Source: Octopus sinensis
Taxonomy: Eukaryota
Assembly: GCF_006345805.1 (NCBI RefSeq)
Contig: NC_043003.1
Location: 70,928,001 to 70,992,000 of the forward strand
Length of the DNA: 64,000 nucleotides
Direction of reading: 5' to 3'
Shown here: positions 16,985-64,000 of the stretch, one piece after another
Layout: every line of letters begins with the position of its first letter
Position numbering within the stretch: position 1 is the first letter of the stretch
The notes under the pieces: generated by a model
What the model was told of the DNA's origin: nothing
Databases searched by the model: none
The model's input: the letters and a program-made list of their open reading frames with translations, nothing else
Program-made: the position numbers and the translations under genes

Positions 16985-17501
16985 TATCTATACAATATGT
17001 TACATTACTCGGTAGTCAAGATAAAACTCTGAGTTTCAGATGCCGAAGTGGAAATCCACATGTTTATGCGACATGGAGAGATGGCTTATCTGGAAAAGCA
17101 GCTTAGACCCTACCACATGTCTAAATACAAGGACAGAGCTTTTCGGATCATGCCCACATGTGACTAAATTTCTGTTACGTTTTTGGTCCCCTAAAGAAAA
17201 CGGATAGAACATGCTTTCTGTGTTATGTCCCAAGAAGATTTTATATATTTTTATATATTTTTATATATTTTTATATATTTTTATGTATTTTTATATAATT
17301 TTTATGACGAAAAATGCGAGCGATGTATAAGTACGCAGGCAAAGCAGAGTATAACAGAGTAATTTCCCTTAATTTTTAACGGTATTTTTTCATAACGTTT
17401 TCAAATAGCCAGATAACGAAGAGATGGTGTTGTGGATTTCCACTTCGGCATCTGAAACTCAGAGTTTTATCTTGACTACCGAGTAATGTAACATATTGTA
17501 T

Positions 17502-17506
<5 letters not shown>
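16985..17506. repeat. Fold-back element with perfect 76-bp arms
   Basis: Arms 16985-17060 and 17431-17506, abutting (TA)n. Confidence 0.9.
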
Positions 17507-20379: not shown

Positions 20380-20691
20380 AGTAGTTGAATGAATTATCCT
20401 AGTATGGATAATTCGGTTAACCGATACCCGGGTAGCAAATTTACGTCAGAAAGCACGGTTGAAGCTACATGCCAAGGGCAGAAATCACGTGCTTTCGTGT
20501 GAAAATTTGTGTTTTTTTTTTACTATAGATAAATGAAAGAATGGAGTCGAACGACGATTTAACAAGATTCCTTTATTCTCGACACATAATGCACCCTTTA
20601 TTCCTTCGGAATTAAGAATATGCAGTCTTCGAAACATGTGTCGAGAATAAAGGAATCTTGTTAAATCGTCGTCCGACTCCATTCTTTCATT

Positions 20692-23691: not shown

Positions 23692-23763
23692 AGCAGAGTG
23701 GCGCAGTGGAAGCGTGCTGGGCCCATAACCCAGAGGTCCGTAGATCGAAACTACGCTCTGCTA
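23692..23763 (+). tRNA. tRNA-iMet-CAT: Initiator tRNA-Met (CAT)
   Basis: AGCAGAG/CTCTGCT acceptor stem with an A1:U72 pair. CTGGG/CCCAG anticodon stem around CCCATAA. T-arm CGTAG-ATCGAAA-CTACG with the initiator-type AUCG loop. TATA-like sequence about 20-25 nt upstream. Confidence 0.97.
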
Positions 23764-28832: not shown

Positions 28833-29330
28833 AGAAACTTGTCATTAAGCCTCAAAACAACATCCCTACTAACTACATACCTAAAGTTATGGATATGTTT
28901 CCACAAAATTAAAATCTGGGTTGGGTGGGGTTATAAAAAATAGCAGATTTCAGTTTGGTCTGAAGGATATTTAATTGAAAATACTGGTTGCTGCGATTTT
29001 CTAATTTTTTAATCATATTTATTTTTTTAATTTTTATTTTTATCTAGTTTCAGCTCACGAGCTGTGGCCATGCTGGGGCACCGCCATTTATATAAAAATT
29101 TTAAAAAGGAAAGAAAATGGAGATAAGGAAGTTAATAATTGTTATTATTAACATCTTCACTTCTTACTGCCGTTTCAATTAATACTCAATAATTTAATTA
29201 CAAATTTGTACTTTAAATTTACATTTATGTGACATGAGTATAATTTCCTCAGAGGGGGTGGGGAAAGGTGCACCTTTGGACGTTATATGTGGACCTATCA
29301 ATTCATTTCAGCAGACTCTGCTGAAATAAA

Positions 29331-29689
29331 TTGATAAGTCCACATATAATATCCAAAGGTACATCGTTTTTTTCTAATGAAATCATGAATTTGAACTCAG
29401 AACGTAGCTCCCATGACTTCAGGAAACATTTTTTCACGCTGAGAGTTACTGAAGCATGGAACAAACTGCCGGCATCAGTTGTTAGTTGTCGGAGCACTGC
29501 ATCCTTCAAAACTTCCATGCTTCCTGAGATTCGCCAACACTACACTTGATTTTCTCCCCTCCATACACACACAAGCATGTATCTGACTCATACATTGTTC
29601 GCTTTCCAGACATTTGTACATTACTGCATGTACTTTATATGCACTTTCTGACAAGTTGTGGCGCACCTGAGCACTACATACTATTAATT

Positions 29690-29725
<36 letters not shown>
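29331..29725 (+). mobile_element. CR1/L2-group LINE 3' fragment with (TAT)n tail
   Basis: RKHFFTLRVTEAWNKLPASVV..SFK motif, 3' UTR and simple-repeat tail. Confidence 0.8.
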
Positions 29726-29730
<5 letters not shown>

Positions 29731-30148
29731 TCATATCACATAAATGTAAATTTAAAGTTCAAATTTGTAATTAAATTATTGAGTATTAATTGAAACAGCT
29801 ATAAGGAGCAAAGATGACCAATATGTTAATAATAAACACACTCGATGTAAAGAAAATTCTAACTGGGCTCCACCTACAAGGTCATGTGCAGTTTATCTAT
29901 GTCGAGCACCTATGTGCCTTGTGCACCCCATACATACATATAAACACACATACATATAAACACAGATACATATAATAAATATGAATAAAGATATTATTCA
30001 CTTTATGTTACGAACGTTTCCATAGAATGGTTATGTATTTGCTCAATGATGTATTATGTTACATAATCACATAACCAGACCATTTCATCAGACATCTTTC
30101 TACAATAGACAGGTATACTGAGACAGACAGACAGATAGACAGACAAAC

Positions 30149-32739: not shown

Positions 32740-32807
<68 letters not shown>

Positions 32808-33142
32808 GAAGTATATTTGCCATTTAAATTTGGCTAACCCTTAAAGGTGGATGCTACTGTAGCTTGTAGTCCCAGGAAGGCATCTCCTCCAGTTGGCTAC
32901 AAGCTACAGTAGCATCCACCCTTATGGCTTAGCCACATTTAAATGGCAAATATACTTCACGATGTCGTGCAACTACTGTCTATACCTCGCTCAGAGATTT
33001 ATTATTGCTTATATATATCTTCTCATCCAAAATGGAGAAGAGTACCAACGTTCCTGTGTAGCAGGCTTGAAAATTGGTAAGAGATCCCTCATTATACGAA
33101 ACCACTGGTAGCCTTGTTAATACACAAATAAAATACGTACAT

Positions 33143-34270: not shown

Positions 34271-34337
34271 ATATGTAATTAGGTAAACTTATATGTATGC
34301 ATGTCATTGGTTATACACGCACATACACACACGTACA

Positions 34338-35100
34338 CGCACTGGGGTCGATGTAATCAACTTAATCTGTTTGTCTGTCCTTGTTTGTCCTCTCTGTGTT
34401 TAGCCCCTTGTGGATAGTAAAGAAATAGGTATCTAGTCTACGCTACGTTCTGAGTTCAAATTCCGCCGAGGTCGACTTTGCCTTTCATCCTTTCAGGGTC
34501 GATAAATTAAGTACCAGTTACGCACTGGGATCGATGTAATCAACTTAATCTGTTTGTCTGTCCCTGTTTGTCCTCTGTGTTTAGCCCCTTGTGGATAGTA
34601 AAGAAATAGGTATCTAGTCTGCGCTACGTTCTGAGTTCAAATTCCGCCGAGGTCGACTTTGCCTTTCATCCTTTCAGGGTCGATAAATTAAGTACCAGTT
34701 ACGCACTGGGGTCGATGTAATCGACTTAATCCTTTTGTCTGTCCTTGTTTGTCCCCTCTATGTCTAACCCCTTGTGGGCAATAAAGAAATAGGTATTTCG
34801 TCTTTCTGAACGTTCTGAGTTCAAATTCCGCCGAGGTCGACTTTGCCTTTTATCCATTCGAGGTCGATAAATTAAGTACCAGTTGCATACTGGAGTCGAT
34901 CTAATCGACTGATCCCCTCTCCTAAAATTTCGGGTCTTGTGCCAAGAGTAGAAAAGAATCGTTTATCACGCTTAGCAGCATTTCATCTGTCCTCGTTCTG
35001 AGTTCAAATTGCGCCCAAGTCGACTTTGTCTTTTATCCTTTCAGGATCGGTAAAATAAGTACCAGTTGAAAACTGGGGTCAATTTAATCGACTGAGGCCG
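34338..35100 (+). repeat. Head-to-tail array of 5'-truncated Meta-type SINE units (period about 183 bp)
   Basis: Unit starts at 34338, 34521, 34702 and 34886. Confidence 0.9.
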
Positions 35101-36512: not shown

Positions 36513-39184
36513 CCTTTCCCCCTTAACTTTTTTTTTTTACGGAATCCCACGTTTTAGGCTATCACAACTTCAAAATTTCAAATCCCCCTCTCCTCATTTC
36601 TTCATTTTTCACTTTTTCCGGAATTTTTTTTTTTTTTTTTTTTTTTTTTTTGCGAAATACGTACAAAAATACGGAGATTATGATTCTGAAACAAAAAAAA
36701 AAGAATGTTTGTAAAATTTCCATTTTTCAAAACCAAGAGAAAGGCAAAATTACGGTCTGAGTACCGTTACTGTCAAACTGGAGCACGTGGTTTTGTTTAC
36801 ATTTGAAGAAGAAGATCGTTGCTTTCCGTAAAATTTTTATCTGTTTATATTTGTGGGGTTGGGGTGGGGGAAGGGTATTTTTTCAATTCGGCGTAAAAGC
36901 GAGACGGAGAGCGCGATTGGGTCGGGGGACTTTTGAAGTTGGCGTTCCGTCTGTATGTGTATGTGTGTGTGTGTCTGTCTGTCTGTGTGAGTGCTACAAT
37001 TTTTTTTCTGCTGCTAACTTTTTATTTCTCTCGGTTTATTTGTTACTAGCAGTATCGCCCGGCGTTGCTCGGGTTTGTAAGGGAAACAACTATATAAGCA
37101 TTTTTAGAGATGTAAAGTATAATAGCCATCTCAATATGGCTAACCACAAAGGGGGTGGGGGTTACTGTAGCTTTTTACGTTCTGAGATTTAATAAATTTT
37201 TAGAGGGTTACTTCCCTTATATATGCCAAAAATGCATTAAAAATGGGAAAAATTGATGGTAATTTTTTTTTAAATCGTAGACTCATCGTAGACGCGCGCT
37301 AATACCCAGAAGGGCTCGATATGAATCACGACTATAAGATACCCGGTTTTGGTTAAACTGCACCGCAAAATGTGGGAGTAGTTAGGAATCTAAATCGTAG
37401 GAGACAGACAGCACACAACCTCACTTTTATATATAAAGATATGTTGGCGATTTTATGATCAGATTCATAGATACGTTAATATTATTATTTTTTTAACGTT
37501 TATACTATTTGTTTTGAAATGTATTATATAAATACAGGCCAGTAATTCAATTCTTGTTAGTATGAATCAGGAAGCCCTTGATACAGAAACCTTTGGAACT
37601 TAAAATATTTCATTTTATTTTCATTTTGCACACAGACGCCTGTACACATAAACACAGACTCACAAACACACACACACACACATACACACACACACACACA
37701 CACACAGTGACACACAAGCACAGACAGAATTTTTCACACACGCCTGTACATTCGAACACAGACACACAAGCTCACATACACACACTCTCACTCACGCACA
37801 TCAATTCTTCCGATTCACACCAACTTCAAAAGAATTTCCCTCATACAATCGCGCTCTCTGTCTCTTTCGCTTTTACGCTGACTTCAAAAGATCCCATTTT
37901 CCCCGAACCCCATATGTAAAAAAATACCACTCAAGCAGGCTATTCGCATGCTAGAAATAACAGCCAAATATCACAAAACTGTGATAACATAACGGAAGAA
38001 ATGTATAATCAATCTACTCACCTTTCTGCAAAGAGATTTCTTTCAGAGTAATATCCTGAAGTAATATGAAAAAGTGAAATTAAAGTGTTCTTTTTTTTTT
38101 CTTTTGAAAGTTACAAAACCACGATCAAGTGGTATGAGTTTTGTCGAGAAATGTGTTTGGAGGAAATGCTTCGACACAAATTTCCGCTCGGTGGTCCAGA
38201 TCATGAAGTAGAAATATATGAGAGCTTGCTCTTTAAAAGGAAGAGCCATGTAGGGAGAATAGGCCATCAAACGTGGGTTGTCAGGTGCTATGACACCACT
38301 GCAAAAAAAAAAAAAAAAAAAAAGATTTCCACAGTGTGTCCCCGACAGAAGCACAGCAACACTATAAGCTGTTATAATTGAAAATGTGTTACCCGGTACT
38401 ATAATACACACTGACAAATGGGCCAACTATAGGAACTTACAACAGCTGGTTTACATTCACAGAACGGTTAACCATTCAAAGAATTTCGTCGACCCTGAAA
38501 ATGGTGCTTGCACGAACCATATTGAGGCCTATTGGTCCCGTATCAAAAGATGGCTGAAGTATGTGACTGGATCATCGGGCAACATGAAATTGTCCCGCAT
38601 CGATGAATTGATGTATCGAGAAATGTTCGGATTTATTGTGAAGAAAAACTTCCAGAATTTCTATACATTTCTATACATATCTCCACTTAACTCCATCGGC
38701 GTGGCTTCTCCGAACACACTTCTTGACTAAACTCATACTTTTTTGTAGCTTTCAAAAAAAAAAAAAAAAGAAAAGAAAACCCCACTTTAATTTCACTTTG
38801 TCATATTACTGCGGGAAATTACTCTGAAAGAAATCTTTGCAGAAAGGTGAGTAGATTGATTATACATTTCTTTCATTATGTTATCGCAGTTTTGTGAGAT
38901 TTGGCTGTTATTTCTAGCATGTGAATAGCCTGCTTGGGGATTTTTTTCTTTTTGAAAAATTGAAATTTTACAAACAATTTTTTGTAGAATCATCATAATC
39001 TCTATATTTTTGTACATATTTCGCAGAAGAAAAATAAAATTCCAGAAAAAATGAAAAATGAAGAAATGAGGTGGGAGGGAATTGAAATTTTGAAGTTGCG
39101 ATTTTTGAAAATTTTTTTCAGAATCGGAATCTCCATAGCCTAAAACGTGGGATTCTGTAAAACAAAAGTTTAAGTGGGGAAAGG
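36513..39184 (+). mobile_element. Merlin/ISXO2(IS1595)-type DNA transposon remnant with long inverted repeats and nested insertions
   Basis: Transposase fragments at 38180-38620 (GGPDHEVEIYES..KRK..GR; PGTIIHTD.W..Y; HRTVNHSKNFVDPENG..TNHIE..WSRIK). 38782-39184 is the inverted copy of 37921-38087 plus 36513-36738. True termini not located. Confidence 0.8.
37046..37439 (-). mobile_element. Non-autonomous Helitron
   Basis: Minus strand starts A|TC and ends CTAG|T, with the subterminal hairpin cccg-agcaacgc-cggg about 8 nt upstream of CTAG. Confidence 0.85.
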
Positions 39185-44053: not shown

Positions 44054-46575
44054 TCATCATCATTGTTTAACGTCCGTTTTCCATGCTGGCATGGGTTGGA
44101 CAGTTTGACAAGTCTGGAGATGCAGCGGCTGCACCAAGTTCCAATCTGATCTGGAAATGTTATTACAACTGGATGCCCTTCCTAACACCAACCACTCTAA
44201 GAGTGTAGTGGGTGCTCTTTATGTGCCACCAGCACAGGAGCCAGTCAGGCGGGCCTGGTATCAATCATGATTGGATAGTGCTTTTTACATACCAGCAGCA
44301 TGGGAGCCAATGAAGGGGTACTAGCATCAGCCATGTTCGAATGGTACATTTTACGTGCCATCAGCACAGAGGCCAGTTAGGTGGTCCTGGCATCGATCAC
44401 ATTCGGATAGTGCTTTTTAAGTGCCATTGGCACGGGAGCCAGTCAGTGGGTACTGGCATTGGCCCTGTTCGGATGGTGCTTTTTATGTGTCACTGGCATC
44501 GACCACATTTGGATGATGCATTTTACATACCACTGGAATGGGAGCCAGCCAAGGAGCACTGGCCACAGCTACAATTTTGGTTTTACTTGACTCAACCGGT
44601 CTGCTCAAGCATATCATATTGCCTGATGCATCAGGGGTAGTCTTAAATGGGCCGGTCATGCAACACTGGCATTGGCCATGGCTGCAATCTCACTTTAGTT
44701 GCCGGGTCTTCTCGATCACAGCATATCTCCAAAGGTCTTGGTCTCCTGTCATTGCCTCTGTGTGGCCCAATGTTTGAAGGTCATGCTTCACCACCTCATC
44801 CCATGTCTTCCTAGGTCTACCTCTTCCACAGGTTCCTTCCACAGTTTGAGAGCGCACTTCCTCACACAGCTGTCATCATCCATATGTAACACATGGCCAT
44901 ATGAGTGTAGTATTCTCTCTTGCACATCACATTTGATGCTTTTTATGTCCAACTTTTCTCTCTGTTGTGTATGCACACTGACATTAAACATCCAGCAGAG
45001 CATACTAGCTTCATTTCTTTGAAGCCTATGCATGTCCTTAGCAGTAATGGCCCATGTTTCACTGCATCATACAGTCTACCTTTCATCCTGAGCGAGAGGC
45101 CCTTAGTTTCCAGCAGAGGTAGGAGCTCCCTGAACTTTGCCCAGGCTATTCTTATTCTAGCTGCTACACTCTCAGAGCAACCACTCCCACTACAGACTAG
45201 GCTACCTAGGTAGCAGAAGCTATTAACTACTTCTAGTTTTCCCCCCTGGCATGTGATGGAATCTGTTTACTGTACATCTTCAGTATTTATTGCCCCTGTG
45301 CATCTGCCATACACAAAAACTAACTTCCTGGTTAAACTTCCTTTGATATTGCTGCAGCTTTTATGTGTCCTTTTATGAGTTTTTACCCATGCCTTTTCTA
45401 CAGATTGAGCAGGGCCATCTACCTGAAGGGCTTTTGCTAGGTTAACTCTAAGGCCCTTCAATTCTAGACCTTGCTTCCACACCCTAAACTTCGTCTCTAG
45501 TTCTGGCAGTGACTTGGCTATTAGAGCAAGGTCATCAGCATAGAGGAGCTCCCAAGGGCAGCCTGTCTTGAATTCCTCTCTTATTGCCTGGAGGACTATA
45601 GTGAATAAGAGGAGGCTGAGGACTGATCCTTGGTGAAGCCCTACTTCTGCCCAGAATTCTTCACTATACTCGTTGCCAACTCTCACCTTACTGACAACAT
45701 CCCTGTACTGTACAGGGCTTGTACAGCTCTTACCAACCACTCGTCTATCCCCAGTTTCTGCATTGACCACCAGATAAGGGATCGGAGGACCCTGTCAAAA
45801 GCTTTCTCCAAGTCAACAAAAGCCAAGTACAGAGGTTTATCATTGATTGGGTATTTCTCCTGCAGTTGCCTTACCAGAAATATAGCATCAGTGGTGCTTC
45901 TACCTAGCACAAAACCAAACTGCATCTCATCTAGGCTAACTCTCTCCTTAATTAGTTGGGCTATGACCCTCTCTGTAACTTTTATCACCTGATCTAATAA
46001 TTTGATACCCCTGTAGTTATTTCTGTCTAAAGCATCACCTTTACCTTTGTAGCAGTTGACTATGGTGTTGCTACACCAGTCATTGGGTATGACTTCATGA
46101 ACTACCTGATTTATGATGCAGGTGACAAGACCATAACCCACACCACCCGATATTTTAAGCATCTCAGCTGTGATTCCTGATGGGCTGCATATCCTTAATT
46201 GCTTTTGGTCCCTCAATTGAGTCAACCATTGGCAGACTTTCCTCCTCCCATTCTCCACATTTAGCAGTCTTTCATAATGGCATCTCCAAGCCTCTTTCTT
46301 TGCAGAATCATTAAATGCAAGGGCGCCATCATCCATGTGGATACATTTCTCTCCTATGACATCACGGTTTTCTCTTACACACTGTCTTGCAATCTGAAAT
46401 GCTTCAGTTCTTTGGTCCTCATGTCGCAGAACATTGGCAAACTTCTTTTCTGCTACTCCCTTAGCTATATATACCTGTCTCCTAGCTCCCCTTTTGGCTA
46501 TCTGACACATTCTCCTGCTACCCCCACTCTTCCAGGTCTGTTTCTTTGCTCTAATGGCCCTATTTACAGTATTGA
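44054..46575 (-). mobile_element. 5'-truncated RTE-clade LINE (RT pseudogene, 3' UTR, (ATG)n tail)
   Basis: QFGFVLGRSTTDAIF, FVDLEKAFDRV, GLHQGSVLS and LLYADDL motifs. The tail sits at about 44054. Confidence 0.95.
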
Positions 46576-55734: not shown

Positions 55735-56803
55735 TCATCATCATCATCATCATCATCATCATTTAACGTCCGCTTTCCATGCTAGCATGGGTTGGACGGT
55801 TCAACTGGGGTCTGGGGAGCCCGAAAGCTGCACCAGTCCAGTCAGATCTGGCAGTGTTTCTACAGCTGGATGCTCTTCCTAACGCCAACCACTCCGAGAG
55901 TGTAGTGGGTGATTTTATGTGCCACCGACACAGGTGCCAGACGAGGCTGGCAAACGGCCACGCTCGGATGGTGTTTTTTTATGTGCCACCGACACAGGTG
56001 CCAGACGAGGCTGGCAGACGGCCACGCTCGGATGGTGTTTTTATGTGCCACCGACACAGGTGCCAGATGAGGCTGGCAAACGGCCACGATCGGATGGTGT
56101 TTGTTACGTGCCCACAGCACGGAGGCCAGTCGATGCGGTACTGGCTACGGCCACGTTCGGATGGTTTTCTTGTGTGCCACGTGCCACCGGCACTGGTACC
56201 ACAAGGATACAAATTCCATTGATGTTCATCTATTTTGATTTGTTTTGATTTTCACTTGCCTCAACAGGTCTTCACAAGAAGGAAGGTAAGCACAGGTGGA
56301 CTGACTACGTCCCAGGTAAGGGCCACGGGTTATGGCCTGACTAGTCTTGCCGGGTCTTCGGATGGTGTTTTTATGTGCCACCGACATAGGTGCCAGATGA
56401 GGCTGGCGAACGGCCACGATCGGATGGTGTTTGTTACGTGCCCACAGCACGGAGGCCATTCGATGCGGTACTGGCTACGGCCACGTTCGGATGGTTTTCT
56501 TGTGTGCCACCGGCACTGGTACCACAAAGATACAAATTCCATTAATGTTCATCTATTTTGATTTGTTTTGATTTGATTTTATTTGATGTTGATTTTCACT
56601 TGCCTCAACAGGTCTTCACAAGTGTCACAAGAAGGAAGGTATGCACAGGTGGACTGACTACGTCCCAGGTAGGGGCCACAGGTTATGGCCTGACTAGTCT
56701 TGCCAGGTCTTCGGATGGTGTTTTTATGTGCCACCGACACAGGTGCCAGATGAGGCTGGCGAACGGCCACGATCGGATGGTGTTTGTTACGTGCCCACAG
56801 CAC
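55735..56803 (-). mobile_element. RTE-related 3' UTR with internal 61-bp repeats and a duplicated block of about 330-350 bp
   Basis: (CAT)n tail at the left. The unit cggatggtgtttttatgtgccaccgacacaggtgccag recurs, and blocks start near 56027, 56359 and 56712. Confidence 0.85.
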
Positions 56804-58078: not shown

Positions 58079-59234
58079 CACAGACATGACAGAAGTAAAT
58101 AGACACCCTATAAAACATAGTTTTGTTTATTCCAACTTGTAAAGGTTTATATTTTTTATTAGTTTATATTTTTATGTGTTAGGTTTTATATGTGATTGTT
58201 TAATCATGCCATGTACAAAAGAAGCCTTAGAACTGTCTGAATTTCAAAAAGGCTATATTGTGGGTCATTCCAAAAGTAGACATAGTGTAAAATCGCAGAA
58301 AAACTTGGGATCCTACTTTCTACAGGTAATAAAGTGATTGTGCAATTCACCAGAGAGGGGGAAGGAATCCACATCACCTTGCCAAGATCAACCAAGGCCC
58401 TCTGACAGGACCCTTCTCTTTGTTAAGAGAAGTGTGGAGGATAATCCTTGTTGCAAGGCCTCTGACATAGCAGAACAAGTTGATGTCAGTCCCAGAACAG
58501 CTGTCAGGTATCTTCACAAACTTGGTTACTATGGCAGAGCAGCAAGAAGGAAGCCACTTCTTCGACCAGCCAATATCAAGCAGAAAAAGGATTGGTCCAG
58601 TCAGATGGGGGAGAGGCCATTAGCATTTTGCGACACTATCATATTCTCTGATGAGTCCAGATATACTGTATTTCTTGACAGTAGTCGAGTGTGCGTCTGG
58701 AGACTCTGTGATCAAGAATTTGATGTGAAAAGATTGCAGCCAACAATGAAACATCGTGTCTATTGTGATGGTCTGGGGAGCAATTTGGAGCAATGGTTGA
58801 TCAGAGCTGGTGGAGTGTGAGGGAAACATAAACTCAGATAAATGTACCCGTATAGCGGAAAGGATTCCTTCCAATCTTCTCCAGTGGTAAAATGATTAAA
58901 GAAGATTTATGGAAGATGGGGCTCCTTGTCACACAGCTAAAATGATCCAAGATTTGTTAGATGAGAATGGCATTATAAAGCTTCCATGGCCAAGTCAGCT
59001 ACCAGATATGAACCCTATTGCACACCTCTGGGACATAATGGACAGGACACTTCATAAAAAGAACATTTTCAAAGCCAGGTCTTTTGAGATCACTGCATGA
59101 AACTTGGCAAGAGATTCCGCAAGAGAATATTTGTCATCTGATCGGTAATATGTTTAATAGGGTCTTTGCATTGAAAAATGCAAAGGGTATGTCTACTAAA
59201 TATTCAGATTATAACAACTTCTGTCATGTCTGTG
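58079..59234 (+). mobile_element. Full-length decayed Tc1-like transposon
   Basis: 18-bp TIR cacagacatgacagaagt at both ends with TA at the left. Motifs FSDESR, MEDGAPCHTAK and WPSQLPDMNPIAHLW. Confidence 0.9.
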
Positions 59235-59557
59235 TGTGTGTATATATATATATGAATTTATGGAAAGGTCTTCCATAAAACTCAACAAATTTGTTTAAAA
59301 TGGAGAAGAGAAGATGTTAGAATCCAAGAGAATTTTTATATTCTCTTAAATTTTAACATCTTCTCTTCTCCATTTTTAACAAAATTGTTGAGTTTTATGG
59401 GATACCTTTCCATAAATTCACATAATACTCCATGTGCAAGTATTATTTTCATATTCGCAAACTTACGCCAGTAAGCTATCAGCAAAATATGAAGAATCTA
59501 TATTATAAAATCGTATTTTGGAATCCTCCAAATTAAAGAATGAAATATATTTCAATC

Positions 59558-59711: not shown

Positions 59712-60115
59712 TTGGCTGTGTGGTAGGTAGCTTCCTTACCAACCACATGGTTCCGGGTTCAGTCCCGCTGCATGGCACCTTGGGCAAGTGTCTTCTACTA
59801 TAGCCTCGGGCCGACCAAAACCTTGTGAGTGGATTTGGTAGATGGAAACTGAAAGAAGCCCGTCGTATATATGTATATATATATGTGTGTTTGTGCGTGT
59901 ATGTTTGTGTGTCTGTGTTTGACCCTCTACCATTGCTTGACAACCGATGCTGGTGTGTTTATGTCGCCGTCACTTAGCGGTTCGGCAAAAGAGACCGATA
60001 GAATAAGTACTGGGCTTACAAAGAATAAGTCCCGGGGTCGAGATGCTCGACTAAAGGCGGTGCTCCAGCATGGCCGCAGTCAACTGACTGAAACAAGTAA
60101 AAGAGTAAAAGAGTA
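59712..60115 (+). mobile_element. Composite tRNA-derived CORE-type SINE with an internal microsatellite (representative copy)
   Basis: Head with a B-box-like ggttcagtccc, CORE-like ggcaccttgggcaagtgtctt, an internal (TA)/(TG) tract and a tail ending (gtaaaaga)n. Other copies or parts at about 8330-8610, 10410-10595, 12025-12150, 20790-21000, 26030-26400, 31510-31925, 35430-35620, 49215-49375 and 60130-60350. Confidence 0.85.
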
Positions 60116-60448
60116 TATATATATATATATATATATGTACATATGTATTTGTGTGTCTATGTTTGTACCCCCACCACCATCGCCCGACAATTGATGCTGG
60201 TGTGTTTACATCCCCATAACTTTGTTGTTTGGCAAAAGAGACTGATAAAATAAGAACAAGGTTTACAAAGAATAAGTCCTGGGGTTGATTTGCTTGACTA
60301 AAGGTAGTGCTCTAGCTTGGCCGCAGTTAAATGACTTGAACAAATAAAAATACATATATACTTAGATATACATACACACATACACATACATGTACATATA
60401 TACATACATACATACATAAATACATACATACATACATACGTACATACA

Positions 60449-60787
60449 TGTGAAGGCGCATGGCTCAGTGGTTAGAGCGTCGAGCTTACAATCGAGAGGT
60501 TGCGAGTTCGAATCCTGGACCAGACTGTGTGTTGTGTTCTTGAGCAAGACACTTTATTTCACGTTGCTCCAGTTCACTCAGCTGTACAAATGAGTTGTGA
60601 CGTCACAGGAGCCAAGCTGCATTGGCTTTTGCCTTTCACTTGGATAACATTGGTGGCATGGAGAGGGGAGGCCGGTATGCATGGGCAACTGCTGGTCTTC
60701 CATAAACAACCTTGACCAGACTTGTGCCTGGGAGGGTAACTTTCTAGGTGCAATCCCATGGTCAGTCATGACCGAAGGTGGTCTCAA
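60449..60787 (+). mobile_element. tRNA-derived SINE (inverted sister copy at 62135-62425)
   Basis: Clear A box (tggctcagtggtt) and B box (gttcgaatcc) followed by a SINE body. Confidence 0.85.
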
Positions 60788-61143
60788 CATACATACATAC
60801 ATACATACAGTGCTATGAACATACTACTTATTTGTAAATTTAGAACTACATTATCCTATGTTCCCTTTCTTATTAATGAGAAAATGTAGGATTTAAAGCA
60901 AATTTGCCTTGTATTTTTGCTGGGTAAGTAACTGCATAGTTTTCCATCAGGATGTTTCATCCCCCGTATGTTTCATCCCCGTTATGTATCATACACCTGC
61001 AGTGCATTGATGACTCTACAATGAAAGCCTTCTCAAATAAGCATGAGTTCCCCAGTTGTTTTGCCACTCTTGTTCAATCAGCTCTTGATATTCTCCATCC
61101 ATTGTGTTCTTTGCCTGCCTCTTGATATACTCTTGATGTTTAA

Positions 61144-61660
61144 TTCGTGTAAAAAAATTATATACATTGTTTTAAAAAATAATTTACTTGGTTTAAAAAA
61201 TTATTTACTTTGCATTTTATTTACTTTGTTCAAAAAATATTATTTAATTTGTGTAAAAAAATTATATACATTGTTTTAAAAAATAATTTATTTACTTAGT
61301 TTAAAAAATTATTTACTTGGCATTTTATTTAGTTTGTTCGAAAAATATTATTTAATTTGGGTAAAAAAATTATATACATTGTTTTAAAAAATAATTTACT
61401 TGGTTTAAAAAATTATTTACTTTGCATTTTATTTAGTTTGTTCGAAAAATATTATTTAATTTGTGTAAAAAAATTATATACATTGTTTTAAAAAATAATT
61501 TATTTACTTAGTTTAAAAAATTATTTACTTTGCATTTTATTTAGTTTGTTCGAAAAATATTATTTAATTTGTGTAAAAAAATTATATACATTGTCTTAAA
61601 AAATAATTTATTTACTTAGTTTAAAAAATTATTTACTTTGTTCGAAAAATATTATTTTAT
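61144..61660. repeat. AT-rich minisatellite, unit about 103-110 bp, about 5 copies
   Basis: Recurring gtgtaaaaaaattatatacattgttttaaaaaataattt. Confidence 0.9.
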
Positions 61661-62441
61661 TTTCTTTGATATGTATTCAGCCTTGAAATAGAAACAGGCG
61701 CAAGTCGTCGTAGGATCGACTACTTACGACTAGATAGCGCGAATGCGTGAGTGCACGAGAGCGCGCACCGGGACTACTGAACAAGGGGAGATAATAAACG
61801 AATGATTCTTTTTCTATTATCTCCCCTCTTTCAGACTCGTCGACGACGTAAATATGTAGAAGCATCTTTTGATAGAAGCTATCGCAGTGTTCATGAGTTA
61901 TTTCATCGAACTTTTCAGATATCAATTGGTGGGCTCTACTGGGCGAGTTAGATAAGATAGACATGTATTCCCTTACGGCTGATGTAGTTTAACTCTCTTT
62001 TTTTTTTTCAAGGCTTGAGCACCAATTGAAAAATACAAATTTGATTGCGAAGAATTCAAATTTGATGGCAAAGAATCCAAACTAGATCGAAAACATCTAA
62101 CTATCTATCTGTCTGTCTGTATATATATATATAAAGGGTAAAGACCACCTTCGGTCATGACTGACCGTGGGATTGCACCCTCCTAGACACAAGTCCGGGC
62201 AAGGTTGTTTATGGAAGACCAGCAGTCGCCCATGCATACCAGCCTCCCCTCTCCACGCCACCAGTGTTATCCAAGGGAAAGACAAAGCTTGGCACCAGTG
62301 ACGTCGCAACTCATTTCTACAGCTGAGTGAACTGCTCAAGAACACAACACGCAGCCCGGTCCGGGATTCGAGCTCACAACCTCACGATCGTAAGCTCGAC
62401 GCTCTAACCACTGAGCCATGCGCCTATATATATATATATAT

Positions 62442-62554
62442 ATTTATTATATAGAAGGAGCTTCTACAGGACTAGAACTGTTTCATTCAAGAGTGAAGAT
62501 TTCTCTTGAATGAAACAGTTCTAGTCCTGTAGAAGCTCCTTCTATATAATAAAT
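62442..62554. repeat. Perfect 52-bp inverted repeat with a 9-nt loop
   Basis: Arms 62442-62493 and 62503-62554 checked base by base. Confidence 0.95.
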
Positions 62555-62620: not shown

Positions 62621-62715
<95 letters not shown>

Positions 62716-62728
62716 TATATATATAATA

Positions 62729-62765
<37 letters not shown>

Positions 62766-62813
62766 ATATATGTATATATATATTATATATATAATATATA
62801 TATATATAATATA

Positions 62814-62898
<85 letters not shown>

Positions 62899-63016
62899 CA
62901 ATTAAGGACAACTACTTAATAAGGAAAACTTAACAAGAAATTGTCAGGTAGATAGCGTGAAAACCTCATAAGAGAAAAAATTTCGAAAATAATTATTTCT
63001 TATTGAACATATTAAT

Positions 63017-63258
63017 TTATATATAGAGGGCATTATACATACATGCCAGATGGCATTATACATACATGCCACACGCTAAGAGGGACAATTAGTCATTTCT
63101 ACCAAAAATATTACTAATCCCACCGAATGCAATTTTTCAAAGTAAGACATTTAAAAAATATAGACCTGTATCACCGTGATTTCATACTTACGTATTCATC
63201 AGCAGGCATGTATGTATAATGCCATCTGGCATGTATGTATAATGCCCTCTATATATAA
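63017..63258. repeat. Fold-back element with perfect 54-bp arms enclosing the hammerhead
   Basis: Arms 63017-63070 and 63205-63258, each with a duplicated ggcattatacatacatgcc unit. Confidence 0.9.
63164..63207 (-). ncRNA. Type I hammerhead ribozyme with a complete canonical core
   Basis: Minus strand reads gcctg-CTGATGA-atac(gtaa)gtat-GAAA-tcacggtga-T-A-caggt. Stems I, II (GNRA loop) and III all pair. Cleavage triplet AUA. Confidence 0.85.
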
Positions 63259-63269
63259 TATATATATAT

Positions 63270-63340
<71 letters not shown>

Positions 63341-63344
63341 CACG

Positions 63345-63378
<34 letters not shown>

Positions 63379-63874
63379 ATATATAAACTCTGAGTTTCCC
63401 GTTGCCGTTCATATAAATTCATCCACATTTTACATATATATTTCGTAATTTAACATAACTTAATTTAATATAATATAATAGAGTCAAGTCCCTATATTAA
63501 TTTCTTTATTGACTTTTACTACCCTACCTACTAATAGTTAACCTTGGATTATTTGTTTTCTATTTGTATACATTTATATATTTTTTGCCTACTTTGTTGT
63601 TTATGTTATCGTTTATTCATTAACCAAACCATAACAAAGTCATGGCCTTTCAAAACAATAGATGACCAATTAGATTATGGGACTGACCATAACCCACTCC
63701 TCACGTCCCGAAGGAATTCAGCAACTCGATAAACAAAAAGTAACGGAAAAATATAAAATATCTTGATTAATACCTGGAAATTTGTTACTTTTAGTACCGA
63801 ATAATATCACAAGTATTAATATAAACTCTAACCACTTATTGTGGACCTTTATCTCAAGCCTTCAATAGAAAACA

Positions 63875-64000
63875 TATCGCGCGTCTACGATGAGTCTACG
63901 ATTTAAAAAAAACTTACCATCATTTTTTCCCATTTTAATGCATTTTTTCGCTATCATATAAGGGAAGTAACTCTCTAAAAATGTCTACGACGAGTCAACG
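63875..64000 (+). mobile_element. Partial copy of the 37046-37439 Helitron family
   Basis: Reverse complement of about 37190-37300 (gcgcgtctacgatgagtctacgatttaaaaaaa...aagggaagtaac). Confidence 0.75.

What the first reader, a model, noticed from the sequence alone, without database searches (positions are those of the whole stretch)
63164..63207. Intact type I hammerhead ribozyme inside a (TA)n-anchored fold-back element
Seen: the minus strand has every canonical core base (C3U4G5A6N7G8A9, G12A13A14, A15.1-U16.1), stem I gcctg/caggt, stem II atac/gtat with a GUAA tetraloop, near-palindromic stem III tcacggtga and an AUA triplet. Predicted cleavage is between 63169 and 63168. It abuts the inner end of one 54-bp arm of a perfect inverted repeat. 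Known: Penelope-like elements (PLEs) and metazoan retrozymes carry minimal type I hammerheads with short palindromic stem III that may act as dimers. Inference: this is a young, possibly active non-autonomous ribozyme retroelement whose RNA would fold back into a long hairpin.
Basis: partly seen in the sequence, partly recalled or inferred. Interest (0 to 1): 0.85.

Follow-up and report, generated by a model that had tools for sequence, protein, structure and literature searches.

The report
Lone hammerhead-like motif in a fold-back
A 44-base stretch matches the textbook hammerhead self-cutting RNA, but it is a single atypical copy inside one of many DNA fold-backs in this animal genome, so it may be a dead relic or a coincidence and is unlikely to be a working mobile ribozyme.

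Summary
On the minus strand, 63207->63164 reads GCCUG|CUGAUGA|AUAC-GUAA-GUAU|GAA|AUCA-CGG-UGAU|A|CAGGU. Every invariant hammerhead core base is present, there are three helices, and cleavage would fall between 63169 and 63168. The motif overlaps by 3 nt the inner end of a perfect 54-nt inverted repeat (63017-63070 / 63205-63258). A motif this complete is expected about 1-2e-5 times per 64-kb window, but about 0.5 times per 2.5-Gb genome.

- No classical Rfam hammerhead model reaches E<=10, even on 52 nt. Only RAGATH-1-hammerhead matches, at 14 bits against a threshold of 56.
- The conserved G10.1-C11.1 pair is A-U.
- The catalytic fold is strongly disfavoured in context (helix I p~0.001).
- There is no second hammerhead, tandem unit, direct repeat or RT/GIY-YIG ORF in the window.
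- No other copy of the element was found in any reachable collection.
- The window holds at least seven unrelated perfect-armed fold-backs, four of which (this one included) abut (TA)n on one side, so the hairpin architecture is generic here.

The origin is undecided between a relic of a PLE-type head-to-head truncated insertion and a coincidence inside a DNA-level fold-back. Genome-wide copy number would decide, and the source genome could not be reached.

The parts
63164..63207 (-). Complete hammerhead type I-like motif (44 nt): GCCUGCUGAUGAAUACGUAAGUAUGAAAUCACGGUGAUACAGGU
   Evidence: It is the only site in the window under the strict, standard and lax descriptors.
63203..63207 (-). Helix I 5' strand GCCUG. 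G63207, C63206 and C63205 also belong to the right inverted-repeat arm and to a local arm hairpin.
63196..63202 (-). Core box C3-U4-G5-A6-U7-G8-A9 (CUGAUGA).
63184..63195 (-). Helix II AUAC/GUAU with a GUAA tetraloop. The 10.1-11.1 pair is A-U instead of the conserved G-C. This is the only helix predicted to form in context (p~0.96).
   Evidence: PMC4209133.
63181..63183 (-). Core G12-A13-A14.
63170..63180 (-). Helix III A15.1-U-C-A / U-G-A-U16.1 with a CGG triloop.
63168..63169 (-). Predicted cleavage site: 3' of A17 (63169), before C1.1 (63168).
   Evidence: Inferred from hammerhead numbering applied. Not tested experimentally.
63164..63168 (-). Helix I 3' strand CAGGU.
63017..63070 (.). Left arm of the perfect 54-nt inverted repeat. 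It contains two tandem 23-nt units (63025-63047, 63048-63070) that differ by one base.
63071..63204 (.). 134-nt unique spacer (the hairpin loop). It carries all of the hammerhead-like motif except 3 nt and has no significant structure of its own (z=+0.34).
63205..63258 (.). Right arm of the inverted repeat, mirroring the two 23-nt units including their one-base difference. Its outer end runs into (TA)n.
63250..63385 (.). (TA)n tract directly abutting the right arm.
62898..63016 (.). 119 nt of unique sequence separating the left arm from the left (TA)n tract (62624-62897). It is single-copy in the window.

Best explanation
The 242-bp unit 63017-63258 is a DNA-level fold-back. It is either a MITE-like element or a microhomology-mediated inverted duplication at a (TA)n tract, and it is one of at least seven such perfect-armed fold-backs in this window. 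The 44-nt hammerhead-like motif lies in its unique loop. It is solitary and atypical, and most probably does not operate as a ribozyme.

If the minus strand is transcribed, the 5' arm folds first into local hairpins that tie up the GCC of helix I. Once the 3' arm is made, the RNA collapses into a perfect hairpin of about 60 bp, which is a plausible Dicer-type substrate. Only helix II of the hammerhead forms with appreciable probability. With no second copy for a dimeric hammerhead, no efficient site-specific cleavage is expected.

Whether the motif is a coincidence or the decayed remnant of a hammerhead-bearing retroelement is left open; I put these at roughly even odds.

Shown here: the sequence match, the inverted repeat, the folding predictions, the absence of partners in the window, and the abundance of unrelated fold-backs. 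Inferred: inactivity, and the DNA-level origin of the fold-back.
For: - No classical Rfam hammerhead family reaches E<=10 on 501, 81 or 52 nt. Only RAGATH-1-hammerhead matches, at 14.1 bits (gathering score 56.3, E 1.6-2.4).
- A10.1-U11.1 replaces the 'highly conserved G10.1-C11.1', which Cervera & de la Pena list among the features that make their motifs non-random. There is no bulged base between A9 and 10.1, and helix II is not the long form typical of PLE motifs (PMC4209133).
- The hammerhead fold scores -6.1 kcal/mol against an MFE of -8.6 for the 44-mer, with P about 0.002.
- In the nascent arm+motif transcript, helix I has p~0.001 and helix III p~0.008. The constrained hammerhead fold is -12.5 against -19.9 kcal/mol.
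- The full element folds as a hairpin at -118 kcal/mol, z=-14.
- There is no second hammerhead or core box, no tandem or direct repeat of the unit, and no other copy in 64 kb.
- No GIY-YIG motif occurs in any frame. The only RT, 17 kb away, is LINE-like by its YADD box and its relatives' RVT_1 + PHD domain make-up.
- Seven unrelated fold-backs with perfect arms of 24-76 nt occur in the window. Each is single-copy there, and four (this one included) abut (TA)n on one side only.
- A motif of this quality is expected about 0.5 times per 2.5-Gb genome by chance.
Against: - The per-window chance of so complete a motif is only about 1e-5.
- Cephalopod genomes do carry hammerheads and Penelope elements: 235 Rfam Hammerhead_1 hits in the giant squid genome (PMC6962438). 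On base rates alone, a lineage origin is at least as likely as coincidence.
- A 4-bp helix II is the canonical size for metazoan type I hammerheads (PMC4209133).
- Hammerhead + (TA)n + an adjacent inverted truncated copy is the published PLE insertion architecture (PMC8557442).
- Minimal PLE hammerheads also fold poorly, cleave weakly in vitro and are mostly found as single motifs (PMC4209133). Poor predicted folding and solitude therefore do not exclude a genuine relic.
- Nearest-neighbour folding ignores the tertiary contacts of the hammerhead core.
Confidence: 0.5

Rival explanations
1. The locus is a relic of a Penelope-like (or retrozyme-type) retroelement, inserted as a head-to-head pair of 5'-truncated copies.
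- The main copy is the minus strand 63204->63017. It starts inside helix I of a genuine hammerhead and ends with two 23-nt repeats and ...CCCUCUAUAUAUAA-3'.
- The inverted copy is the plus strand 63205->63258, carrying only the last 54 nt of the same 3' end.
- Both 3' ends point outward into a (TA)n target.
- The GCC that completes helix I comes from the junction, by microhomology or luck.

The hammerhead once processed the parent element's RNA, probably as a dimer. In this truncated solo copy it is at best weakly active.
For: [quoted passage not shown] They prefer (TA)n targets and carry hammerheads in their flanking repeats / near the 3' end (PMC8557442).
- Most PLE hammerheads occur as single motifs, probably from truncated PLEs, and some lie close together on opposite strands (PMC4209133).
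- The inverted-repeat geometry fits exactly.
- All core bases are intact, at a chance rate of about 1e-5 per window.
- Two copies in trans fold into a double hammerhead at -26.7 kcal/mol.
- Cephalopods have Penelope elements and Rfam-detectable hammerheads (PMC6962438).
Against: - No RT/GIY-YIG ORF and no second hammerhead in the 63 kb downstream. Only 0.74 kb upstream is visible.
- The hallmarks of PLE minimal hammerheads (extra base after A9, G10.1-C11.1, helix II of 6-8 bp) are not met.
- No Rfam hammerhead family matches.
- No other copy of the presumed 3' end was found anywhere reachable.
- The other six fold-backs in the window have the same geometry without any hammerhead core.
- (TA)n abuts only one side.
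Confidence: 0.33
2. One reading: a young, active, non-autonomous ribozyme retroelement. Its fold-back RNA self-cleaves at A63169|C63168, possibly as a dimer, and propagates through RNA (retrozyme-like, possibly circular).
For: - The core is intact.
- The arms are perfect, suggesting a recent origin.
- The RNA would be highly self-paired, like retrozyme circRNAs (PMC7229834).
- A double-hammerhead fold is predicted for two copies in trans.
Against: - Metazoan retrozymes are defined by tandem repeats of 150-450 bp, each with a type I hammerhead (PMC7229834). Here there is one unit and one hammerhead, so unit-length excision or circularisation is impossible.
- The hammerhead fold is strongly disfavoured in context.
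- The 10.1-11.1 pair is A-U.
- No family copies were found.
Confidence: 0.08
3. The fold-back is a hairpin-RNA locus (for example MITE-derived) that yields small RNAs. Under this reading the hammerhead-like string in the loop is irrelevant.
For: A perfect stem of about 60 bp at -118 kcal/mol, z=-14, and many similar fold-backs nearby.
Against: There is no expression data. The Rfam miRNA matches are low-complexity noise far below their thresholds.
Confidence: 0.09

Closest known systems
Hammerhead ribozyme, type I (Rfam clan of Hammerhead_1/HH9/HH10; metazoan 'canonical' type I)
   Same: All invariant core bases are present, with the A15.1-U16.1 pair, H17 = A and an open helix I. Helix II has the canonical 4 bp and a 4-nt loop, and helix III is short.
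   Different: The 10.1-11.1 pair is A-U rather than G-C, and 15.2-16.2 is U-A. Helix I has 5 bp rather than 6, with no recognisable loop-1/loop-2 contact. Helix III has 4 bp and a non-palindromic triloop, not 1-2 bp with a palindromic loop. It fails every classical Rfam hammerhead model and has no family or covariation evidence.
Minimal hammerheads of Penelope-like elements (Cervera & de la Pena 2014; Craig et al. 2021)
   Same: It is a type I motif with a short helix I (4-5 bp) that occurs as a single motif. It lies next to a (TA)n microsatellite, with an adjacent inverted partial copy forming inverted repeats. Poor monomer folding and a possible dimer are also shared.
   Different: There is no bulged base after A9, no G10.1-C11.1 and no long helix II. 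No pLTR direct repeats and no RT/GIY-YIG ORF are within reach. (TA)n abuts one side only.
Metazoan non-LTR retrozymes (Cervera & de la Pena 2020)
   Same: AT-rich, a few hundred nt long, a highly self-paired RNA, and a type I hammerhead.
   Different: It is not tandemly repeated. One hammerhead cannot release a unit-length RNA, and no circRNA evidence exists.
MITEs / fold-back elements and palindromic duplications at AT-rich microsatellites
   Same: Small (242 bp), AT-rich and non-coding, with long perfect terminal inverted repeats that contain tandem sub-repeats and TA-rich ends. Several analogous fold-backs occur in the same window.
   Different: No unambiguous target-site duplication can be read in the TA context, and multi-copy status is not demonstrated. 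MITEs are not known to carry hammerheads.

Membership tests
Hammerhead ribozyme (type I) | Invariant core C3 U4 G5 A6 N7 G8 A9 / G12 A13 A14, A15.1-U16.1, H17 | tested here: met
   CUGAUGA ... GAA, A63180-U63170, A17 = 63169.
Hammerhead ribozyme (type I) | Three helices around the core, with helix I open | tested here: inconclusive
   The helices can be drawn: I 5 bp, II 4 bp, III 4 bp. Thermodynamic prediction does not adopt them. The 44-mer hammerhead fold has P~0.002, and helices I and III have p<=0.01 in native context.
Hammerhead ribozyme (type I) | Highly conserved G10.1-C11.1 pair | tested here: not met
   A63195-U63184. The conservation is stated in PMC4209133 and PMC2837043.
Hammerhead ribozyme (type I) | Score at or above the Rfam gathering threshold for a hammerhead covariance model | tested here: not met
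   Nothing at the gathering threshold. At E<=10, only RAGATH-1-hammerhead matches, at 14.1 bits against 56.3. No Hammerhead_1/3/II/HH9/HH10 match.
Hammerhead ribozyme (type I) | Related copies with a conserved core and compensatory changes in the helices | not testable with these tools
   There is no second copy in the window. DNA scans of prokaryote-centred collections gave only chance 19-22-mers. Peptide look-ups through the element found nothing.
Hammerhead ribozyme (type I) | Site-specific self-cleavage | not testable with these tools
   This needs in vitro transcription or RNA-end mapping.
Penelope-like element (hammerhead-bearing pLTR) | ORF with RT and a GIY-YIG endonuclease | tested here: not met
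   No GIY...YIG motif in any of the six frames of the window. Nothing recognisable by eye in the six-frame translation of 57-64 kb. This was a motif-level test only, and just 0.74 kb upstream is visible.
Penelope-like element (hammerhead-bearing pLTR) | Hammerheads in both flanking direct repeats (two motifs about 3 kb apart, same strand) | tested here: not met
   There is a single motif in 64 kb, even under the lax descriptor and the core-only scan.
Penelope-like element (hammerhead-bearing pLTR) | Minimal-hammerhead hallmarks: base between A9 and 10.1, G10.1-C11.1, helix II of 6-8 bp, palindromic 15.2-16.2/loop 3 | tested here: not met
   No bulge, an A-U pair and a 4-bp helix II. The 15.2-16.2 U-A pair is self-complementary, but loop CGG is not palindromic.
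Penelope-like element (hammerhead-bearing pLTR) | 5'-truncated insertion with an adjacent inverted 5'-truncated copy, at a microsatellite target | tested here: inconclusive
   The geometry fits. However, the same geometry occurs in six other fold-backs without a hammerhead, and (TA)n abuts one side only.
Metazoan non-LTR retrozyme | Tandem repeats (two or more units of about 150-450 bp), each with a type I hammerhead | tested here: not met
   No tandem repeat of the unit and no second copy. The definition is from PMC7229834.
MITE / fold-back element | Terminal inverted repeats, small size, AT-rich, non-coding | tested here: met
   54-nt perfect arms, 242 bp in all, local GC about 28%, and only short chance ORFs.
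MITE / fold-back element | Target-site duplication and a multi-copy family | tested here: inconclusive
   The flanks are TA-rich, so a TA duplication is trivially satisfied, and an 8-bp duplication is not present. The element is single-copy in the window. The genome-wide count could not be obtained.

The most novel reading that the evidence does not exclude
A new kind of small fold-back mobile element (with MITE-like geometry) that carries a functional variant type I hammerhead with an A10.1-U11.1 pair in its hairpin loop. The ribozyme would cleave co-transcriptionally, or as a dimer between two transcripts, before the long hairpin forms. That would link self-cleaving ribozymes to hairpin/fold-back elements rather than to tandem retrozymes or PLE terminal repeats.
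Probability: 0.07. Interest if true: 0.65.

Novelty: new member of a known kind. Interest (0 to 1): 0.3.

Why it matters
If the motif belongs to a real family, it would add a cephalopod-type animal lineage and an unusual A10.1-U11.1 variant to the catalogue of retroelement-borne hammerheads. It would also show a hammerhead inside a fold-back insertion at a (TA)n tract, which bears on how PLE or retrozyme RNAs are processed.

If it is a coincidence, it is a useful caution. A textbook-perfect minimal hammerhead is expected about once per large AT-rich genome. Core-plus-stems matching alone is therefore not evidence of a ribozyme without family conservation, covariance-model support or cleavage data.

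Tried and rejected
1. Rfam at the gathering threshold on the whole window, and at E<=10 on 501, 81 and 52 nt. No classical hammerhead family matched, only RAGATH-1-hammerhead at 14 bits.
2. A search for further copies in the window by pattern and by sensitive blastn. None was found, and the arms only resemble (ATAC)n microsatellites.
3. Exact 19-mer scans of the arm unit in metagenome, prokaryotic-genome and viral collections. These gave only chance 19-22-mers in bacterial or viral contigs.
4. Peptide look-ups through the element, using the reading frame that is open across the motif and right arm. The full HMMER scan of 1.84 billion representatives gave two spurious tandem-repeat proteins.
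5. Attempts to reach the source genome:
   - Ten window ORFs are not in the protein collection.
   - The RT ORF finds relatives of at most 54% identity at full length, the best-named being Argonauta hians, plus a 73% partial fragment from a 586-bp contig labelled E. coli.
   - The one locus fetched (L009) is unrelated beyond the RT.
   - A translation of the window's high-copy SINE-like repeat finds nothing.
   - Copy number and covariation therefore could not be tested.
I replaced it with a motif regex, an eye-read of the translations and Pfam on discrete ORFs.
7. The supplement of Craig et al. 2021, which holds cephalopod Naiad consensus sequences with 'HHR_core' marks, is not held.
8. A 14-mer (AAACTCTGAGTTTC) shared between 63386-63399 and the arm of the 16985 fold-back does not extend into a real alignment.
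9. Rejected readings:
   - Metazoan retrozyme, because there is no tandem repeat.
   - miRNA matches, which are (TA)n noise.
   - 'Palindromic helix III' as independent evidence, because any hairpin can dimerise.

Full report
WHAT IS THERE

On the minus strand, 63207->63164 reads GCCUG CUGAUGA AUAC GUAA GUAU GAA AUCA CGG UGAU A CAGGU. In hammerhead numbering:
- Helix I has 5 bp, with an outer G.U pair.
- The core box is C3-A9.
- Helix II has 4 bp and a GUAA loop.
- G12-A13-A14 follow.
- Helix III has 4 bp, including A15.1-U16.1, with a CGG loop.
- A17 is 63169 and C1.1 is 63168.

My own descriptor scan recovers exactly this site and no other in the window, on either strand, even with very lax settings. 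A core-only scan (CUGANGA-N7-17-GAAA, including the U3-A8 variant) finds only unrelated strings elsewhere.

The inverted repeat is real. Arms 63017-63070 and 63205-63258 are 54 nt long and 100% complementary, with 134 nt between them. Each arm is two tandem 23-nt units that differ by one base, and that difference is mirrored in the other arm. Three bases of helix I (G63207, C63206, C63205) lie inside the right arm.

The '(TA)n anchoring' is one-sided. The right arm runs into (TA)n 63250-63385. The left arm is separated from (TA)n 62624-62897 by 119 nt of unique sequence.

IS IT MORE THAN CHANCE?

I tested three descriptors against 420 Mb of Markov-1 sequence trained on the window.
- Strict (helix I >=5, II >=4, III >=4, short loops): 0 hits.
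- Standard (4/3/2 bp, loops 3-30): 0.13 hits per Mb per strand, or 0.016 per window.
- Lax: 0.6 per window.

The analytic rate reproduces the standard figure within 1.5-fold. For the strict descriptor it gives about 1e-10 per base-strand. That is about 1.3e-5 per 64-kb window and about 0.5 per 2.5-Gb genome. The motif is therefore highly unusual for one window. One such coincidence per large genome is still expected, so the match alone does not prove a ribozyme.

INDEPENDENT MODEL-BASED TEST

Rfam finds only a tRNA at gathering thresholds. At E<=10, no classical hammerhead family (Hammerhead_1, _3, _II, HH9, HH10) appears on 501, 81 or 52 nt. The only hammerhead model that aligns is RAGATH-1-hammerhead, at 14.1 bits (gathering score 56.3, E 1.6-2.4).

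The motif departs from natural consensus at positions that those models weight:
- 10.1-11.1 is A-U rather than G-C.
- 15.2-16.2 is U-A rather than the C-G of the aligned RAGATH-1 hammerhead consensus (GAAAC...GUC).
- Position 17 is A.

Cervera & de la Pena (PMC4209133) list four features that argue against a random origin of their motifs:
- consensus families with covariation;
- an extra base between positions 9 and 10.1;
- the highly conserved G10.1-C11.1 pair;
- palindromic 15.2-16.2 and loop 3.

Here the first cannot be tested and the second and third are not met. The fourth is met only trivially, because loop CGG is not palindromic and any hairpin can dimerise.

FOLDING
- The hammerhead secondary structure of the 44-mer is -6.1 kcal/mol, against an MFE of -8.6, with P about 0.002.
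- The 53-mer is no more stable than its shuffles (z = -0.25).
- In the nascent transcript (right arm + motif), the arm forms local hairpins that use the GCC of helix I. Helix I has p~0.001, helix III p~0.008 and helix II p~0.96. Forcing the hammerhead costs 7.4 kcal/mol.
- The complete element folds into a hairpin of about 60 bp (-118 kcal/mol, z = -14) that extends over the helix I strand.
- Two copies in trans are predicted to form the double-hammerhead topology (-26.7 kcal/mol). No second copy exists nearby.
- Nearest-neighbour models ignore the tertiary structure of the hammerhead core. This argues against efficient monomer activity but does not disprove it.

CONTEXT

The window is from an animal genome. 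It contains:
- an initiator-type tRNA-Met;
- a LINE-type RT pseudogene;
- a Tc1/mariner remnant;
- a tRNA-derived SINE-like repeat;
- dozens of microsatellites.

The best-named RT relative is from the octopod Argonauta hians, at 54% identity. A cephalopod source is therefore an inference, not a result.

There is no GIY-YIG motif in any frame of the window. No tandem or direct repeat of the unit exists, and no second hammerhead.

The window contains at least seven fold-backs with perfect arms of 24-76 nt. Their left-arm starts are at 16985, 20551, 29172, 32806, 37996, 62442 and 63017. They are unrelated in sequence and each is single-copy in the window. Four of them, including this one, abut a (TA)n tract on one side only. 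The neighbouring fold-back at 62442-62554 even has a similar outer end (TATATAGAAGGAG against TATATAGAGGGC). The hairpin architecture is therefore generic in this genome and not specific to a ribozyme element.

TWO STRUCTURAL READINGS THAT I CANNOT SEPARATE

(a) DNA-level fold-back. This is either a MITE with 54-bp terminal inverted repeats made of two sub-repeats, or a microhomology-mediated inverted duplication at a (TA)n tract. The second explains the one-sided (TA)n, the TA-rich outer ends, the perfect arms and the unrelated sequences of the various fold-backs. Under this reading the hammerhead-like string is a coincidence that spans the spacer/arm junction.

(b) PLE-type insertion. Craig et al. 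(PMC8557442) describe PLE insertions as follows:
- they are highly 5'-truncated;
- they prefer (TA)n targets;
- they carry hammerheads in their flanking repeats / near the 3' end.

Read this way, the minus strand 63204->63017 is a 188-nt 3' fragment that begins inside helix I. The plus strand 63205->63258 is a 54-nt inverted copy of the same 3' end. Cervera & de la Pena note that most PLE hammerheads are solitary, probably from truncated PLEs, and cleave poorly in vitro. The giant squid genome has 235 Rfam Hammerhead_1 hits and Penelope elements (PMC6962438).

Weighing base rates against the atypical features gives roughly even odds between a relic and a coincidence. My estimates span about 30-90% for a relic, depending on assumed hammerhead density and clustering. 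These assumptions are mine, not measurements.

THE RETROZYME READING

Metazoan retrozymes are defined by tandem 150-450-bp repeats, each with a type I hammerhead (PMC7229834). That is not the case here, and a single hammerhead cannot release a unit-length or circular RNA.

WHAT COULD NOT BE DONE

- DNA pattern scans cover prokaryote-centred collections and returned only chance 19-22-mers.
- Exact look-ups show the window's ORFs are not in the protein collection.
- Peptide searches through the element and through the high-copy SINE found nothing.
- The one related locus fetched is from another organism.

VERDICT

The most likely working description is a solitary, atypical hammerhead-like motif in the loop of a generic fold-back. 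It is expected to be inactive as a monomer in its native context, and its origin (relic or coincidence) is open.

At most it is a new member of a known kind. Interest is modest (0.3) unless genome-wide copies with covariation or cleavage data appear.

Noticed in passing
window 16985-17506, 20551-20672, 29172-29796, 32806-32960, 37996-38872, 62442-62554: Six further fold-backs have perfect arms of 24-76 nt. They are unrelated in sequence and each is single-copy in the window. Three of them abut a (TA)n/(AT)n tract on one side only. Some have longer degenerate arms (for example about 170 nt at 81% for 37996-38872), which suggests a range of ages. This points to a recurrent fold-back-generating process or to many MITE families in this genome.
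   Followed up: partly
window 62442-62554: This is a 113-nt near-perfect hairpin (52-nt arms, 9-nt loop) only 460 nt from the hammerhead-bearing element. Its outer end TATATAGAAGGAG resembles that element's TATATAGAGGGC. It sits between a (TA)9 run next to a SINE-like head and unique sequence.
   Followed up: partly
window 23692-23763 (+): An initiator-type tRNA-Met gene (anticodon CAT), Rfam tRNA 56 bits. It is the only Rfam match at the gathering threshold in the window.
   Followed up: no
window 45267-46510 (-): A LINE-type reverse transcriptase pseudogene, split into two ORFs by a frameshift (RVT_1, YADD box). The closest full-length relatives are at most 54% identical, and the best-named one is from Argonauta hians. 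Some relatives carry PHD domains.
   Followed up: partly
window ~58338-59500 (+): A decayed Tc1/mariner transposase (HTH_Tnp_Tc3_2 plus a DDE-like region in another frame, with stops and frameshifts).
   Followed up: partly
window 62113-62447 and 60432-60810: Two inverted copies (77% identity) of a SINE-like repeat whose end near 62423 looks tRNA-derived (...GGCGCATGGCTCAGTGG...). A conceptual translation of it has no counterpart in the 5.8-billion-protein collection, which suggests the source species is not represented there.
   Followed up: partly
window 34337-34910, 61139-61640, 44212-44493, 55913-56102, 59904-60349: Tandem repeats with longer units: 181 bp x3.1, 108 bp x4.7, 66/132-bp and 62-64-bp units sharing a 'TTTTATGTGCCACC...' motif, and 247 bp x1.8.
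   Followed up: no
window 63875-63982 vs 37196-37301: A 109-nt stretch near the window end is 91% identical, inverted, to a stretch at 37.2 kb. It is an unclassified dispersed repeat.
   Followed up: no
L001, L004, L005 (bacterial/metagenome contigs): Several unrelated prokaryotic contigs share an exact 20-22-mer that contains the arm's 19-mer GGCATTATACATACATGCC. This is probably a conserved bacterial gene segment and is unrelated to the element.
   Followed up: no
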